Origin: Heteronotia binoei
Taxonomy: Eukaryota
Length of the DNA stretch: 64,000 nucleotides
NCBI RefSeq assembly: GCF_032191835.1
Contig: NC_083237.1
Location: 44,826,001-44,890,000 of the forward strand
Reading direction: 5' to 3'
Position 1 is the first letter of the stretch. Every line of letters begins with the position of its first letter. This document shows, piece by piece, positions 30,852-42,363 of this stretch. The position numbers and the translations under genes are program-made. A model generated the notes under the pieces. It was not told the DNA's origin. It saw only the letters and a program-made list of their open reading frames with translations, and did no database searches.

Positions 30852-31466
30852 ATGCTTATTCTGTTCCATGTCATGATCACCCCACTGCTCTGTGTCACCT
30901 GCACTGCACCCCTTCCCAATAACAGTGCCCTCCCCAACACTACTGAGGCCCTCTGGGCTGAGACCCCTCTTGGGGACTGGGACCTCTTCTCTCCCCGCGT
31001 CACGCTTTCTAACCACCAGCCGATTGACCCCCCGTTGCTTTTTCTCATGGAAGACTCTGGCACCCACCCGGGGCAGGCTGCTAACAGGACACTGAAGTTG
31101 AAACGGTCACTGGAGGGGACCATACGGCGAGGGGAGATGTCAGTGTGCGACAGCGTCAACGTCTGGGTGACAGACAAACGGACGGCGGTGGACATTCGTG
31201 GCAAAACTGTGACGGTGCTTTCAGAGGTCCAGACGCTGACGGGGCCGCTCAAGCAATATTTCTTTGAGACCAAGTGTAACCCTGCGGGGGGCACGGTGAG
31301 CGGCTGTCGTGGCGTGGATCGACGCCACTGGATCTCTGAGTGCAAGGCTAAACAGTCATATGTGAGGGCGCTCACTATGGATTCCGACAAGATTGTGGCC
31401 TGGCGCTGGATCCGAATCGACACCTCCTGTGTCTGCACTCTGCTCACTCGCACTGGCCGGACGTAG
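30852..31466 (+). CDS. NTF4: Neurotrophin-4 prepro-protein, single coding exon, 204 aa
   Basis: Signal peptide [20 protein letters not shown]; pro motif [13 protein letters not shown]; NRT sequon then KLKR cleavage site; mature [23 protein letters not shown]...KQYFFETKC...[22 protein letters not shown]...[21 protein letters not shown] with six Cys, close to recalled amphibian NT-4; acceptor ttctcgtccag at 30830; synteny with LHB. Confidence 0.96.
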
Positions 31467-34199: not shown

Positions 34200-35467
34200 A
34201 ATAATAATAATAAAATTTTATTTATATCCCGCCCTGAGCCGCCGAAGCGGGCTCAGGGCGGCTAACAACATTTTCATAAAATTATACAGAGTTTAAAATC
34301 GCATTAGCTTTAAAGCGTTCCCGTTAACCAAGTACTATACAGATTTCCAGGTGCTAATTCCATTTATAGATGATAATAGCGAAAGTCACCCAACAGCGGT
34401 CTCTCAGCCAGCAAAGGCCATCCTGAAAAGGCCCTGCGGAACTGGTCAAGGCACCGCAGGGCTCGCACTTCTTCCGGGAGCTGGTTCCATAGGTGTGGAG
34501 CTGCGATGGAGAAGGCCCGTATACGAGTGTTTTGAAGTTTGGCCTCCTTTGGTCCAGGGATAGTCAGCTGGTTCTTCCCTGCTGACCTCAGTGCCCTCTG
34601 GGGTTCGTATGGGGAGAGACGGTCCCTCAGGTAGGCAGGTCCTCGGCCATATAGGGCTTTAAAGGTAATAACCAGCACTTTGTAACGAACCCAGTAGGTA
34701 ACTGGCAACCAGGGCAGCTCGCATAGCCCCGGCTGTATGTGCTCCCACTTCGGGAGCTCTAATATCAGCCTAGCCGCCGCGTTCTGCACCAGCTGCAACC
34801 TCCGGGTTCGGCACAGAGGCAGCCCCATGTAGAGGGCATTACAGTAATCCAATCTTGAGGTGACCATTGCATGGATCACTGTTGCTAGGTCCTGGCGCTC
34901 CAGGAAGGGAGCCAACTGCTTTGCCCGCTTCAGGTGGAAAAACGCCGACTTGGCAGTGGCTGCTATCTGAGCCTCCATTGATAGTGAAGGCTCCAATAGG
35001 ACTCCCAAGCTCTTGACCCGGTGCGCCGCTTTCAGAGGCACACCGTCAAAAACTGGGAGAGGGATTTCCCTCCCCAGGGCGCTGCGACCCACACAAAGGA
35101 CCTCTGTCTTTGTCGGGTTCAGCTTCAGCCCACTCAGCCTAAGCCAAGTTGCCACAGCCTGCAATGCCAGGTCCAAATTCCCTGGAACGCAGTCAGGCCG
35201 GCCGTCCATTAGCAGATAGAGCTGGGTGTCGTCTGCATATTGGTGACACCCAAGCCCATACCTCCGGGCAATCTGGGCAAGGGGGCGCATATAGATATTA
35301 AATAGCGTCAGGGAGAGAACTGCTCCCTGCGGCACCCCACAATCAAGTGTGTGCTTCTGGGACAGCTCACCCCCGATTGCCACCCTTTGTCCCCAACCCT
35401 TGAGGAAGGAGGAAAGCCATTGTAGGGCTAGCCCCCCAACCCCTATGTCGGCAAGGCGGCGGGTCAT
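34200..35467 (-). mobile_element. 5'-truncated L2 LINE (RT C-half and 3' tail) inserted into a TAGGGTTGCC MITE
   Basis: ORF 34364-35476 has GVPQGAVLS, YADDTQLY, LNPTKTE, SRLDYCNALY, LQLVQNAAARL, HI..L.WLP, RAFS.AAP.LWN.LP; 3' hairpin gccctgagccgccgaagcgggctcagggc and (TTA)n tail; MITE halves at about 34083-34199 and 35470-35560. Confidence 0.93.
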
Positions 35468-35614
35468 TATGAACATTATGGTCCCTCCCCTCCATAAACC
35501 CCACCATCCTCAGACTCCTCTGGCAAAATCTTAACGAAATTCCCAGCCTGGAACCCCAAGTTAAATGGATCAGGTAGATGGGGAGGTGAAAGGCCTCAGC
35601 CTGAAACCCTAGAT

Positions 35615-38322: not shown

Positions 38323-38924
38323 ACATCCTTCGTGTCTCTCAGATGTGTGCACACATACATAGGATACATGGGATAACCTGCACCGTGGTGAATCTACTCT
38401 GCCCCATCCCAATTCTCATGCAGCCAGCTGACATGCTTGCTGGAGGAATTTTGCAGGAATCCCTCACCTGGTCCGTGGCAACCACTCCAGCCCTGCTCCA
38501 AAAACAGGAACACTGTAGCTACCACCACCTGCACATGCCCCAGGCAGACCTGAAACAAATGTTGGGTCCTCATTGTAGGCACAAAAGTTGCCACTGCCCA
38601 CAGCTGTGCGGCTAGTCTTTGGGAGAGTTGGGAAGATGGAGGCAGGAAGCATGCACAAGGGAGGGGGAGTTGCAAGGGGTGCTGGAGGTCTTAGGAATTA
38701 CCACTGGTCAGTCACAGCCCAAGGGTGTTTGGCCCGATGCTGCCGTCTCTGAATAGTCTTCAGTTGCTCCAGAAAGATTGGAACCAGATGGTTGTGAGGG
38801 AGCAGACTACACATTACTGAGTGATAAATGCATCTTTTTTATCTTCTGTGAAATCTGTAGAGTGGAACCGTATGGTTGTACTTCAGCTAAACCGCTTCAG
38901 TAGCCCCAGGGTCACTGCAATTGG

Positions 38925-39125
38925 ACTGTGGCTCAGTGGCAGAGCATCTGCTTGGCATGCAGAAGGTCCCAGGTTCAATCCCCAGCATCTCCACTTAAAA
39001 AGACCAGGGAGTAGTTGATGTGAAAGACTTTGGCCTGAAACCCTGTAGAGCATCTGCCAGTCTGAGTAGACAATACTGATCCTGATGGACCTAGTTCAGT
39101 ATAAGGCAACTTCCTGTATGTTCAA
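38925..39125 (+). mobile_element. Squam2-like SINE
   Basis: gtggctcagtggcagagcatctgcttggcatgcagaaggtcccaggttcaatccccagc...cagtataaggcaacttcc. Confidence 0.8.
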
Positions 39126-39821
39126 GGGGCTGCAGTGCCAGAAACCCCCTTGTCTGTCTACCAACCCCGTTAGATACTTCTTGAATCCTGCCAAGGCCCC
39201 TTCTGTGTGCTATGCTTCCAGCTCGAGATACACTCAGCAATGACAAGGGGGCATTCCAAAGCCCAAAGTGTCATAGAGACGTTGACGCATAGAGCACTGA
39301 CCTCTTGGTTGCTGTATCACTGACCAGTTTTCCTGACCAAAGGTGGTTTGCACTGAGAGCACAGTGAATATATCTCTGGGAGGAAAGAAAAGGGAGAGAA
39401 GAGTGCAAGAGAAAGAACAGATCCAGACAGACAGAAGGTAAAAACACATGGGTTTTAAAATAAGGAAAATGTGGTCCCATGTTGCTGATTGGGGTTAAAG
39501 GTAGCTTAGTCTAGAAAGGTTGAAGATCTACCATTGGGAAACAGGGCACTGTTGGATTGTTTACTGTGATTTTCCAAATGCAGGAGGGCTCTTCACAAGT
39601 TCCTGTCTGAGAAGCATGAATGTGCATTGGAGGGGGAGAGATGGACTCGATGGCTCATGGCTCTCACCCATATACATTCTGTAGAACAGGTGTACATGCA
39701 TAGGATTTGTCTGGATGATCGGACACCATGGTAAATGTAGTCCCAATTTTGTGTGCATAATTGATATGTATGAAGACTCTGGTTTGCAAGTTATATGCAT
39801 AAAAGGGTGGGGACAACATCT

Positions 39822-41236: not shown

Positions 41237-41838
41237 CCGATCAACACTACGATTCACACAATGTGTGTACATGCGTATCATTTAGTGCAAGTATAAGACA
41301 AAATAATAAAATAAAGGAATGCTAGGAAAATGCTCTCCCCCAATCAATTCACTACAACATTTCCACATAGGTAACAGCCTTAACACAGTCCATAACTCAG
41401 TGATGTAGGGTGGAATCCTTAGTAGTTCTGCTCATGATGTTGTGCTGGAGAGAATAAGGAACCATATAGAAAGGAGTCCTCACGGTTTCGCTTACTCAGT
41501 TCTTTGTCAGCCTCTTCTCTCACCGTTTCATGGAGCCACAGTAACTTTGTTCGAAACACGGATCAACGCATGCTCTAAAACTCTGCTGCCGACTCTCTGA
41601 GCTTTACAGCATGTGTTGATTCATGTTGGAAACAAAGTGGAAGCTGGCCCAGGGCCCCTAAAGGCATGGGGGCCCATAGGCCAGTGCCTACTTGGCTTAA
41701 TTGTTAAACCGGCTCTGCCTCTATACCTTGTGGCTAGCCATGGATGGACAGTCCTGTGCTTTACAACACACAAATGACTTGGGTCTGATGTTTTGCACTT
41801 TCTGGGTCTTGTTTCTTTCTCTCACCGCACAGGCAGGG

Positions 41839-42363
41839 ATGCTGATTCTGTTCCACGCTGTGATCTCCCCACTGCTCTGTGCCATTCATGCTGTCCCCCT
41901 TGGCCAGGAGAATGCTGTCATCAACACTACCGAGATCACGGAGATGGTCCTCTTCTCCGCACGGGTTGTCCTTTCCCCCCAGGAGCTCTCAGCCCCCCCC
42001 TTGGTCGACAGCCCCAGTGCCCTTGATGAGTGGTCAGTGTGCAGGAGCGTCAGTACATGGGTGGCGGACAAACGAACAGCGGTGGACATCGCTGGCAGAA
42101 ATGTAACAGTGCTTCCTACAGTCCAAACTTCTGCTGGCGTGCTCAAGCAGTATTTTTATGAGACCAAGTGTCAACCTGCTTGGGCCACCGACATGAGAGG
42201 TTGCTTGGGGGTGGACTCACGCCACTGGATCTCCAGGTGCAAGACAAAACAGTCATTTGTGAGGGCCCTCACTCAGGATTCTGAAGAACGGGTGCACTGG
42301 CGCTGGATCCACATCGACACATCTTGCGTCTGTTCCCTGTTCAACCGCACTGGCCAGACGTAG
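41839..42363 (+). CDS. NTF4-like neurotrophin paralog, 174 aa, no dibasic pro-cleavage site
   Basis: Signal peptide [18 protein letters not shown]; [12 protein letters not shown] pro motif; six knot Cys; 73/107 identical to the upstream NTF4 from Cys1 onward (manual alignment); polypyrimidine acceptor ctcaccgcacag at 41832; open frame to TAG. Confidence 0.9.

What the first reader, a model, noticed from the sequence alone, without database searches (positions are those of the whole stretch)
41839..42363. Second NTF4-derived neurotrophin that has deleted its pro-domain cleavage site (candidate obligate pro-neurotrophin)
Seen: 10.4 kb downstream of an intact NTF4 lies a second, same-strand neurotrophin ORF (174 vs 204 aa). 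It has its own splice acceptor and signal peptide, the LFS.RV.LS..PPL pro motif, six knot cysteines and about 68% identity (73/107) from Cys1. The 32-aa NTF4 segment [32 protein letters not shown] is replaced by 8 aa (VDSPSALD). This removes the NRT sequon, the KLKR site and the RR site, leaving no dibasic site between signal peptide and Cys1. The three net indels (-21, -72, +3 nt) all keep frame and there is no stop, although flanking DNA similarity is almost gone. Established: neurotrophins are matured at this site by furin/PCs, and uncleaved proNGF/proBDNF signal through p75NTR-sortilin with effects opposite to mature Trk ligands; tetrapods are described as having four neurotrophins. Inference: this may be a selected, lineage-specific fifth neurotrophin that is secreted only in pro-form, or a heterodimerising modulator of NT-4/BDNF.
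Basis: partly seen in the sequence, partly recalled or inferred. Interest (0 to 1): 0.92.

Follow-up and report, generated by a model that had tools for sequence, protein, structure and literature searches.

The report
Lizard fifth neurotrophin without furin site
Next to its normal neurotrophin-4 gene, this gecko carries a second, intact copy with no protease cutting site; the copy is about as old as the lizards, so it is a natural "uncleavable" nerve growth factor that nobody appears to have studied.

Summary
A 174-aa neurotrophin ORF (41839-42363, +) lies 10.4 kb downstream of an intact NTF4. It keeps six knot cysteines and is 73/107 identical to NTF4 from Cys1. No basic processing site lies between the signal peptide and Cys1.

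The "gecko-specific" reading is wrong. The same short-pro-region gene sits in the same slot (NTF4, paralogue, next gene) in geckos, skinks, a cordylid, lacertids and anguimorphs. It is a broken pseudogene in Pogona, untraceable in Sceloporus and absent in alligator. The tree places the duplication on the squamate stem.

Selection maintains it, but loosely. Omega is 0.30 in the knot domain (p about 6e-22 against 1), versus 0.02 for NTF4. It is 0.66 in the leftover pro-region.

The ancestral deletion removed more than the KSKR site. It also took the N-terminal Arg-Gly that is near-invariant in 180 other neurotrophins; that Arg is the one that pairs with TrkB Asp298. All six geckos have also lost the conserved-patch Arg (NGF R103).

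My best reading is a secreted, glycosylated dimer that convertases cannot mature and that is a poor classical TrkB agonist. p75NTR-biased or modulatory action is inference only. Evidence for transcription is indirect. Papers do not describe the gene; databases auto-name it "BDNF-like".

The parts
30852..31466 (+). Canonical NTF4 coding exon (204 aa). It has the KLKR convertase site and the RRGEMSVC mature N-terminus. This is the parent copy.
   Evidence: It is 94% identical to a gecko NT-4 and sits in the squamate NT-4 clade. Omega is 0.10 overall and 0.021 in the mature domain.
41831..41832 (+). Splice-acceptor AG preceding the paralogue's coding exon. The polypyrimidine tract plus cacag|g is conserved with NTF4 and among gekkonids.
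   Evidence: RefSeq models in Eublepharis, Hemicordylus and Elgaria splice a short upstream exon into the homologous acceptor. Use of this acceptor in this species was not shown.
41839..42363 (+). Complete ORF of the NTF4 paralogue (174 aa plus stop).
41839..41892 (+). Predicted signal peptide (about residues 1-18, [18 protein letters not shown]), homologous to the NT-4 signal peptide.
   Evidence: Alignment with NT-4. Modelled as a helix at residues 3-16. The cleavage point is inferred, not computed.
41893..42039 (+). Retained N-terminal extension (residues 19-67). It is the front half of the NT-4 pro-peptide, with the N29-T-T sequon (41923-41931) and the conserved pro-box S-x-R-V-x-L-S..E...P.L. 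It contains no basic processing site.
   Evidence: Omega is 0.66. In the AF2 model residues 19-38 have pLDDT below 50, while the 41-50 block averages pLDDT 94 with a strand at 43-46.
42001..42036 (+). Deletion scar (residues 55-66, [12 protein letters not shown]). It replaces the NT-4 segment that carries the NRT sequon, the KLKR site and the mature tail up to RRG.
   Evidence: The Arg and Gly just upstream of Cys1 are near-invariant in 180 other neurotrophins (R 1.00, G 0.98) and are absent from all 14 paralogues scored.
42040..42360 (+). Cystine-knot (mature-type) neurotrophin domain, Cys68 to Thr174.
   Evidence: Pfam NGF. Six cysteines are invariant. The top fold matches are BDNF, NT-4 and NT-3, with TM-score up to 0.89 by target. 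Omega is 0.30.
42310..42312 (+). His158 codon, at the position of the family-invariant Arg (NGF Arg103, motif I-R-I-D).
   Evidence: The Arg is replaced in 9 of 14 paralogues, including all six geckos. The role of NGF Arg103 is described in PMC9497175.
42205..42207 (+). Leu123 codon, at the position of the near-invariant Arg of G-C-R-G (0.99). The Arg-to-Leu change occurs only in the four gekkonids.
   Evidence: The residue lies in the predicted dimer interface, residues 122-127.

Best explanation
**What it is.** This is a functional squamate-wide tandem paralogue of NTF4, in effect a fifth neurotrophin gene of lizards. The duplication happened on the squamate stem, after the split from turtles and crocodilians. 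One ancestral in-frame deletion of about 24 codons then fused the front half of the pro-peptide to a point about five residues before Cys1. That removed three things: the pro-domain N-glycan site, the KSKR convertase site and the mature N-terminal tail ending in Arg-Arg-Gly.

**Shown.**
- The ORF is intact in 15 squamate sequences, ten of them from named species and the rest unnamed (this window and four Logan contigs).
- Gene order is conserved.
- Purifying selection acts mainly on the knot domain.
- Basic processing sites are absent in 13 of 15 sequences.
- Two Trk-contact arginines are lost.
- The fold is a neurotrophin fold, and a canonical homodimer is predicted.

**Inferred.**
- After signal-peptide removal the protein is secreted as an N-glycosylated protomer of about 155 aa. 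It dimerises like other neurotrophins but cannot be matured by furin-type convertases, so it permanently carries an N-terminal extension of about 48 residues.
- It lacks the tail Arg that pairs with TrkB Asp298. In geckos it also lacks the conserved-patch Arg. It is therefore unlikely to be a conventional high-affinity TrkB agonist.
- It more likely acts as a Trk-weak ligand (p75NTR-biased or a partial agonist) or as a modulator.
- The short conserved pro-box probably survives because it helps the knot domain fold.

**My odds.** Real selected gene, about 0.9. Not processed by convertases, about 0.75. Weak or non-canonical Trk ligand, about 0.45.
For: **Distribution and synteny.**
- Orthologues with the same short pro-region occur in Gekko kuhli, Eublepharis, Euleptes and two unnamed gecko contigs. 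They also occur in Tiliqua, Lerista, Hemicordylus, Podarcis, Lacerta, Elgaria and Varanus.
- The order NTF4, paralogue, next gene on one strand was read from the annotated loci of Eublepharis, G. kuhli, Lacerta and Elgaria; the Hemicordylus and Tiliqua loci show the first two genes in that order.
- In alligator, NTF4 is followed after 1.2 kb by the next gene, with no second copy.

**Phylogeny.** The paralogue clade has 100/99 support and is nested in a squamate NT-4 clade with 100/98 support.

**Selection.**
- Omega is 0.41 overall (p 3e-20), 0.30 in the knot domain (p 6e-22) and 0.66 in the extension (p 0.03).
- For geckos alone the knot domain gives 0.38 (p 1e-7).
- A two-ratio test gives NT-4 0.022 against paralogue 0.33 (p 2e-27).
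- M1a puts 51% of codons at omega 0.13.

**Loss elsewhere as a contrast.** The Pogona copy has a stop, frame changes, a lost Cys and an insertion of about 370 nt.

**Processing sites.** There is no RxxR or dibasic motif before Cys1 in 13 of 15 sequences.

**Receptor-contact residues.**
- Arg62 and Gly63 are lost in 14 of 14 paralogues. Arg158 is lost in 9 of 14, including all the geckos.
- Published roles: NT-4 Arg11 pairs with TrkB Asp298, and this N-terminal site confers specificity (PMC13732090). NGF Arg103 stacks on TrkA Phe327 (PMC9497175).

**Structure.**
- AF2 gives mean pLDDT 79.8. The best PDB matches are BDNF, NT-4 and NT-3.
- The homodimer scored 0.70 against a best control of 0.00. 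That mark was reached by 21 of 30 proteins solved as homodimers and 0 of 23 solved as monomers. The three runs agree in at least 71% of contacts, and partner pLDDT is at least 65.

**Transcription (indirect).**
- Four RNA runs from two studies hold 33-75% of the CDS words.
- The 525 nt just upstream are held at 0.06 and 0.22, and are not listed for the other two runs.
Against: - Splicing, tissue and expression level in this species are unknown, and RNA libraries can carry genomic DNA.
- **Upstream exon unclear.** The exon seen in Eublepharis has no conserved GT donor at the homologous spot in the two gekkonids.
- **The gene is dispensable in some lineages.** It is a pseudogene in Pogona and untraceable in Sceloporus. 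No snake copy was found.
- **Constraint is loose.** About half the codons evolve near neutrality.
- **One exception on processing.** One unnamed paralogue (P0131) has Lys-Arg five residues before Cys1, so processing is not excluded everywhere.
- **Non-convertase cleavage was not tested.** Examples are an S1P-like R-V-V-L|S site in geckos, plasmin or MMPs.
- **Receptor inferences are indirect.** They rest on residue identity only.
- **The dimer pass may reflect model memory** of solved neurotrophin dimers.
Confidence: 0.6

Rival explanations
1. It is a conventional TrkB agonist. The extension is either harmless or is removed by a non-convertase protease, for example S1P/SKI-1 at R-V-V-L|S, or extracellular plasmin or MMP. 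The gene would then be a redundant or tissue-specialised second NT-4.
For: The knot domain, Trp74 (the site-3 Trp in PMC13732090), the Q-Y-F-x-E-T core and the dimer interface are all conserved. Geckos and Podarcis carry R-V-[VITSA]-L-S in the pro-box. P0131 has a Lys-Arg near Cys1.
Against: The N-terminal Arg that pairs with TrkB Asp298 is missing in all paralogues. The NGF-R103-equivalent Arg is replaced in all the geckos. The P4 Arg of the S1P-like motif is absent in skinks, the cordylid, Lacerta, Elgaria and Varanus, so that cleavage cannot be the conserved mechanism. Knot-domain omega is 15 times that of NT-4.
Confidence: 0.2
2. It is a heterodimerising modulator or dominant negative. It would pair with NT-4 or BDNF in co-expressing cells and yield dimers with one defective receptor face.
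For: The canonical dimer interface is retained and a dimer is predicted. Neurotrophin heterodimers exist as solved structures (1bnd, 1b8m). Receptor-contact arginines are lost while the core is kept. The paralogue lies 10 kb from NTF4 on the same strand.
Against: No co-expression data exist. Only the homodimer was modelled. The gekkonid Arg-to-Leu change lies in the interface itself and could equally disfavour heterodimers. Loss in iguanians, with NT-4 unchanged, argues against an essential partnership.
Confidence: 0.15
3. It is a true obligate pro-neurotrophin. The retained pro-sequence would engage sortilin or SorCS2 together with p75NTR, to signal death or pruning as proNGF and proBDNF do.
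For: There is no convertase site. The conserved pro-box is retained and modelled with high confidence. Trk determinants are lost. One of the two basic residues of the loop I recall as p75-binding in NT-4 (Arg34, Arg36) is kept in 12 of 14 paralogues (position 87).
Against: Only about 48 residues of pro-sequence remain, and they are barely constrained (omega 0.66, p 0.03; not significant in geckos alone). A specific receptor-binding module would be expected to be more constrained. NT-4 is listed as constitutive-pathway cargo, unlike BDNF (PMC12627180). Gekkonids have also replaced the Arg of G-C-R-G and the first loop Arg, and have gained an N-R-T sequon in the C-terminal tail. From memory, those regions contact p75NTR.
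Confidence: 0.15
4. It is a slowly decaying duplicate with no function, or an assembly or annotation artefact.
For: Omega is raised and about half the codons are near neutral. The gene has been lost in iguanians.
Against: The ORF is intact with six cysteines in the 15 paralogue sequences (ten named species), which span roughly the age of crown squamates. Omega is below 1 at p about 1e-20. The Pogona copy shows what real decay looks like. The gene is present in independent assemblies.
Confidence: 0.03

Closest known systems
Neurotrophin-4/5 (NTF4), the parent gene 10 kb upstream
   Same: It descends from NTF4 and sits inside the squamate NT-4 clade. It shares the signal peptide, splice acceptor, pro-box, six-cysteine knot and fold.
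   Different: It has no KSKR site, no NRT sequon and no RRGE tail. In geckos the I-R-I-D Arg is His, Tyr or Gln. Knot-domain omega is 0.30-0.33 against 0.02 for NT-4. An N-V-T sequon has been gained in the first hairpin in 9 of 15 sequences.
Uncleaved proNGF / proBDNF (pro-neurotrophins acting on p75NTR with sortilin or SorCS2)
   Same: It would be secreted with pro-sequence still attached to the knot domain.
   Different: proNGF and proBDNF are cleavable precursors with pro-domains of about 100 aa or more. Here the site is genetically absent, only about 48 residues remain, those residues are nearly unconstrained, and the mature N-terminal tail has gone too. Receptor binding was not tested.
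Furin-resistant proNGF / proBDNF mutants used in the laboratory (from my own knowledge)
   Same: The basic cleavage motif is eliminated, so the precursor form persists.
   Different: Those are engineered point mutants that keep the full pro-domain and mature tail. This is a natural deletion variant that has been maintained since the squamate stem.
Lineage-specific extra neurotrophins: teleost NT-6/NT-7 and duplicated elapid venom NGF
   Same: They are extra family members made by duplication in one vertebrate lineage, with faster evolution than the parent. For elapid NGF see PMC3843689.
   Different: They derive from NGF and, as far as I know, keep a convertase site and a normal mature N-terminus. 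The present gene derives from NTF4 and lacks both.

Membership tests
Neurotrophin / NGF family (PF00243) | NGF-domain profile match above the curated threshold | tested here: met
   150.5 bits against a cut-off of 27, E 2e-44.
Neurotrophin / NGF family (PF00243) | Six cysteines of the cystine knot in conserved register | tested here: met
   All six are invariant in the paralogues and in 180 other neurotrophins.
Neurotrophin / NGF family (PF00243) | Neurotrophin fold | tested here: met
   The AF2 model matches BDNF, NT-4, NT-3 and NGF chains at E about 1e-12, with TM-score by target of 0.77-0.89.
Neurotrophin / NGF family (PF00243) | Parallel homodimer through the central beta-strands | tested here: inconclusive
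   The prediction passes (0.70 against a best control of 0.00; that mark was reached by 21 of 30 proteins solved as homodimers and 0 of 23 solved as monomers; runs agree in at least 71% of contacts; pLDDT at least 65). Solved relatives exist, so the pass may be model memory.
Neurotrophin / NGF family (PF00243) | Synthesis as a pre-pro-protein matured at a basic (furin/PC) site upstream of the knot domain | tested here: not met
   No RxxR, KxKR or dibasic motif lies before Cys1 in the window protein or in 13 of 15 paralogues. All NT-4 sequences checked have one.
Neurotrophin / NGF family (PF00243) | Mature N-terminal R-G-E-x-S-V-C tail (Trk site 1) | tested here: not met
   Arg and Gly are near-invariant in 180 others (R 1.00, G 0.98) and absent in 14 of 14 paralogues. 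The role of this Arg is described in PMC13732090.
Neurotrophin / NGF family (PF00243) | Conserved-patch Arg (NGF Arg103) | tested here: not met
   It is His158 here and is replaced in all six geckos, but kept in 5 of 14 paralogues.
Neurotrophin / NGF family (PF00243) | Binding to Trk and p75NTR receptors | not testable with these tools
This needs wet assays.
NTF4 orthologue | One-to-one descent and position with tetrapod NTF4 | tested here: not met
   The true orthologue is the upstream ORF. This one is a paralogue clade (100/99) within squamate NT-4.
Pro-neurotrophin ligands (proNGF / proBDNF type) | A long pro-domain that binds sortilin or SorCS2, attached to a p75NTR-competent knot domain | tested here: inconclusive
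   Only about 48 residues are retained, with omega 0.66. Binding cannot be tested here.
Pseudogene | Stops or frameshifts, with omega not different from 1 | tested here: not met
   The ORF is intact in 15 squamate sequences (ten named species), and omega is 0.41 at p 3e-20. The Pogona copy does meet this definition.

The most novel reading that the evidence does not exclude
Most lizards outside the iguanians (geckos, skinks, cordylids, lacertids, anguimorphs) carry an unrecognised fifth neurotrophin that convertases cannot mature and that has shed its Trk-specific contacts. It would act as a natural Trk-silent, p75NTR-selective (or receptor-modulating) ligand. That would be an experiment of about 200 million years showing what a permanently 'pro-like' neurotrophin does in vivo.
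Probability: 0.25. Interest if true: 0.8.

Novelty: new variant of a known kind. Interest (0 to 1): 0.65.

Why it matters
Textbooks give tetrapods four neurotrophins, each made as a precursor that furin-type proteases cut. Whether the uncut forms are physiological ligands is a long-running debate, argued mostly from engineered cleavage-resistant mutants.

Here evolution has made and kept such a molecule across most lizard lineages. Iguanians provide natural knock-outs, and geckos show further loss of Trk-contact residues.

The gene offers three things:
- a testable natural ligand for separating p75NTR from Trk signalling;
- a comparative system (geckos versus skinks and lacertids versus iguanians) for how a growth factor changes receptor usage after duplication;
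- a correction to genome annotations that currently call it "BDNF-like".

If it turns out to be only a weak, redundant NT-4, it is still a newly recognised member of a heavily studied family.

Tried and rejected
- **Read laying.** There is therefore no read-level evidence on splicing, strand or tissue.
- **Logan contigs L003 and L004.** I checked them as possible transcripts. They run colinear with genomic DNA through the acceptor, so they say nothing about splicing.
- **Upstream exon.** I looked for the homologue of the Eublepharis exon 1 (ATG plus two codons, then GT). The region is conserved in the window near 38.6-38.7 kb, but the GT donor is not. The 5' exon remains undefined.
- **S1P-like R-x-V-L|S site as an alternative processing site.** The P4 Arg is absent in most non-gecko paralogues, so I rejected it as a conserved mechanism.
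- **Positive selection.** M2a against M1a was not significant (2dlnL 5.3, p 0.07).
- **Codon-model bug.** My first codon-model runs had a branch-indexing bug. The corrected run gives almost the same values, and it is the one cited.
- **Flanking ORFs.** Pfam scans of ten flanking ORFs found only a LINE reverse-transcriptase fragment.
- **Literature.** Four searches for a described squamate NT-4 duplicate found nothing. A search for published p75NTR contact residues also found nothing usable, so my p75 statements rest on memory and are marked as such.
- **Earlier notes of this scan.** They held nothing on this locus.
- **Euleptes look-up.** One genomic look-up did not run because the service was busy.

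Full report
**1. Observation**

The window holds two same-strand neurotrophin ORFs.
- The upstream one (ATG 30852, stop 31464-31466, 204 aa) is a typical NT-4.
- The downstream one (41839-42363, 174 aa) starts 10,373 nt after the first ends.

Both match Pfam NGF. They are 51% identical overall. The alignment has a 7-aa gap, a 24-aa gap over the processing region and a 1-aa insertion. From Cys1 they are 73/107 identical.

Both exons are preceded by the same polypyrimidine tract and cacag|g acceptor.

Between Met1 and Cys68 the second protein has no RxxR, no KxKR and no dibasic pair. It keeps one N-x-T sequon at residue 29 and six knot cysteines.

**2. It is not gecko-specific**

A protein search found full-length relatives with the same short pro-region in Gekko kuhli, Eublepharis, Euleptes and two unnamed gecko contigs.

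Fetching the NTF4 loci of a cordylid and a skink unexpectedly showed a second NGF-family gene downstream of NTF4 there too.

A profile search and an exhaustive HMMER scan then added Lerista, Podarcis, Lacerta, Elgaria, Varanus and two unnamed contigs.

| Species | State at the NTF4 locus |
|---|---|
| Eublepharis, G. kuhli, Lacerta, Elgaria | NTF4, paralogue, unnamed next gene (about 330 aa in three; a 393-aa model cut by the locus end in Elgaria), all on one strand |
| Hemicordylus, Tiliqua | NTF4 then paralogue on one strand; next gene lies beyond the fetched flank |
| Alligator | NTF4 followed after 1.2 kb by the next gene; no second copy detectable |
| Sceloporus | No trace between the two flanking genes |
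| Pogona | Clear wreck of the paralogue |

The Pogona remnant reads as follows. The short pro-region is followed directly by V-C-D-A and then a stop. The next piece is in another frame and has lost Cys2. An insertion of about 370 nt follows, and then a third frame.

No snake copy appeared in either search. That is absence of evidence only.

**3. Phylogeny**

I built a maximum-likelihood tree of 53 neurotrophins.
- The 14 paralogues form one clade (100/99).
- That clade is nested with squamate NT-4 (100/98), apart from turtle, crocodilian, mammal and amphibian NT-4.
- Long branches tend to be drawn outward, so this inward placement is conservative.

With Gekkota and four other major lineages carrying the gene, the duplication belongs on the squamate (possibly lepidosaur) stem. 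That is roughly 200 million years ago by my general knowledge of squamate dates. Tuatara could not be checked.

All copies share the same deletion within two or three residues, and so does the Pogona wreck. A single ancestral event is the parsimonious reading.

**4. Selection**

I made codon alignments of eight paralogues and seven NT-4 genes and analysed them with my own GY94-type likelihood code. The corrected run is.

| Region | Paralogue omega | p against omega = 1 | NT-4 omega |
|---|---|---|---|
| Whole ORF | 0.41 | 3e-20 | 0.10 |
| Knot domain | 0.30 | 6e-22 | 0.021 |
| N-terminal extension / pro-region | 0.66 | 0.03 | 0.195 |
| Knot domain, geckos only | 0.38 | 1e-7 | not computed |

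- A joint two-ratio model strongly prefers different rates: 0.022 for NT-4 against 0.33 for the paralogue (p 2e-27).
- Pairwise NG86 values agree.
- Site models put 51% of codons at omega 0.13 and the rest near 1. The signal for positive selection is not significant (p 0.07).

The gene is therefore maintained, but far more loosely than its parent. The leftover pro-sequence is barely constrained apart from a short box (S-P-x-V-x-[LF]-S...E-P...P).

**5. What the deletion did to the protein**

The deletion did not merely remove the convertase site. I aligned the paralogues against 180 other NT-4, BDNF and NT-3 sequences.
- The Arg and Gly immediately before E-x-S-V-C are near-invariant in the family (R 1.00, G 0.98). 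Both are missing from all 14 paralogues scored.
- A 2026 TrkB-BDNF structure paper states that this Arg (NT-4 Arg11 in 1HCF, BDNF Arg134) pairs with TrkB Asp298. It also states that this N-terminal site confers Trk specificity, and that D298R/H299E abolishes binding (PMC13732090).
- The family-invariant Arg of I-R-I-D is NGF Arg103, which stacks on TrkA Phe327 in the conserved patch (PMC9497175). It is His here and is replaced in all six geckos and three other paralogues.
- The four gekkonids have three further changes. They replace the near-invariant Arg of G-C-R-G with Leu, they replace the Asp after Cys1, and they gain an N-R-T sequon in the C-terminal tail.
- Nine of 15 paralogues have gained an N-V-T sequon in the first hairpin.
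- In contrast, all cysteines, Trp74, the Q-Y-F-x-E-T strand and the V-x-A-x-T strand are kept.

**6. Structure**

- An AF2 model built on a 42-sequence alignment has mean pLDDT 79.8. The knot domain is above 90. Residues 19-38 are disordered. The pro-box block 41-50 has pLDDT 94 and forms a short strand.
- The best PDB matches are BDNF, NT-4 (including the TrkB-d5 complex) and NT-3. The closest by sequence are 1b8m and 1bnd.
- The secreted form (residues 19-174) was predicted as a homodimer.
  - It scored 0.70 against a best control of 0.00. That mark was reached by 21 of 30 proteins solved as pairs of one chain and 0 of 23 solved as single chains.
  - The three runs agree in at least 71% of contacts, and partner pLDDT is at least 65.
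  - The interface (63-68, 107-109, 122-132, 137-142, 156, 161-169) is the canonical one.
  - Because neurotrophin dimers are solved, the pass may be model memory. It shows likeness, not binding.

**7. Expression**

I worked beside those places and sent none of their letters to search tools afterwards.

Three lines of indirect evidence remain.
- Four RNA runs from two studies hold 33-75% of the sampled words of the CDS.
- The 525 nt just upstream of the acceptor are held at only 0.06 and 0.22 in two of those runs, and are not listed for the other two. That is the pattern expected of an exon boundary, although DNA carry-over is not excluded.
- RefSeq models in Eublepharis, Hemicordylus, Elgaria and Varanus join a small upstream exon to the homologous acceptor, and Varanus has two isoforms. 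This suggests transcript support there. That is my inference from how such models are usually built.

**8. Mechanism**

Shown:
- a selected, secretory-type cystine-knot neurotrophin with no convertase site;
- loss of Trk site 1, and in geckos also of the conserved-patch Arg.

Inferred:
- secretion as a glycosylated dimer that permanently carries a tail of about 48 residues;
- weak or altered Trk engagement;
- action through p75NTR, as a partial agonist or antagonist, or through heterodimers.

The near-neutral evolution of the tail argues against its being a dedicated sortilin-type binding module. The conserved pro-box more plausibly serves folding. Rivals and odds are given in their own sections.

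**9. Novelty**

Four literature searches found no description of a squamate NT-4 duplicate. The one paper on squamate neurotrophin evolution deals with NGF (PMC3843689). Databases carry the gene only under automatic names, "brain-derived neurotrophic factor-like" and "neurotrophin-4-like".

It is a new variant of a known kind. By descent and fold it is a neurotrophin. It fails three features that otherwise define how the family is made and how it meets Trk receptors.

Noticed in passing
L010:15247-15917 (Pogona vitticeps, about 5 kb downstream of NTF4): A pseudogenised copy of the paralogue. The short pro-region is fused to V-C-D-A and followed by a stop. The next segment is in another frame and has lost Cys2. 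An insertion of about 370 nt follows, and then a third frame. This looks like a natural knock-out in an agamid.
   Followed up: yes
L007:10616-19380 (Sceloporus undulatus): No recognisable remnant of the paralogue lies between NTF4 and the next gene. This would be a second, more complete loss in an iguanian.
   Followed up: partly
P0131 (unnamed Logan contig): This is one of only two paralogues with any dibasic pair before Cys1, and the only one with it near Cys1 (Lys-Arg five residues upstream, S-V-A-K-R|W-F-P-V-C; Varanus has Arg-Lys much further upstream). It may have regained or retained processing. The species is unknown, and it sits weakly near the skinks in the tree.
   Followed up: partly
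window 42040-42360; P0002-P0004: Gekkonid-only changes at positions that are otherwise family-invariant: Asp to Arg or Asn after Cys1, Arg to Leu in G-C-R-G, Glu to Arg in I-S-E-C, and a new N-R-T sequon in the C-terminal tail. Eublepharis and Euleptes lack them.
   Followed up: partly
P0135 (Elgaria), P0142 and P0151 (lacertids), P0122 (Hemicordylus): These paralogues have C-terminal extensions beyond the usual R-T-G-R-T end. Elgaria has two extra cysteines after the knot.
   Followed up: no
window 34364-35476 (-): A 370-aa ORF with a reverse-transcriptase domain (Pfam RVT_1, 2.5e-17). It is a LINE fragment in the spacer between the two neurotrophin genes.
   Followed up: partly
window 38323-39820 and about 38600-38700: A non-coding block 72-80% identical to G. 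kuhli and Eublepharis. It includes the homologue of the Eublepharis first exon (ATG plus two codons), but the GT donor is not conserved in the two gekkonids. It is a candidate promoter or first exon of the paralogue.
   Followed up: partly
L009 (Alligator mississippiensis): The gene order is NTF4, an unnamed 340-aa gene, a Cys_knot gene (probably LHB), then MED25 on the other strand. The gene of about 330 aa with no Pfam domain flanks the neurotrophin locus in Eublepharis, G. kuhli, Lacerta and Sceloporus among the squamates examined (Elgaria has a 393-aa model in that position).
   Followed up: no
window 31080-31145; squamate NT-4 proteins: Squamate NT-4 uses K-[SL]-K-R rather than the R-x-x-R seen in the crocodilian, turtle, frog and mammal NT-4 checked here.
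   Followed up: no
I did not examine them further and did not send them to any search.
   Followed up: no
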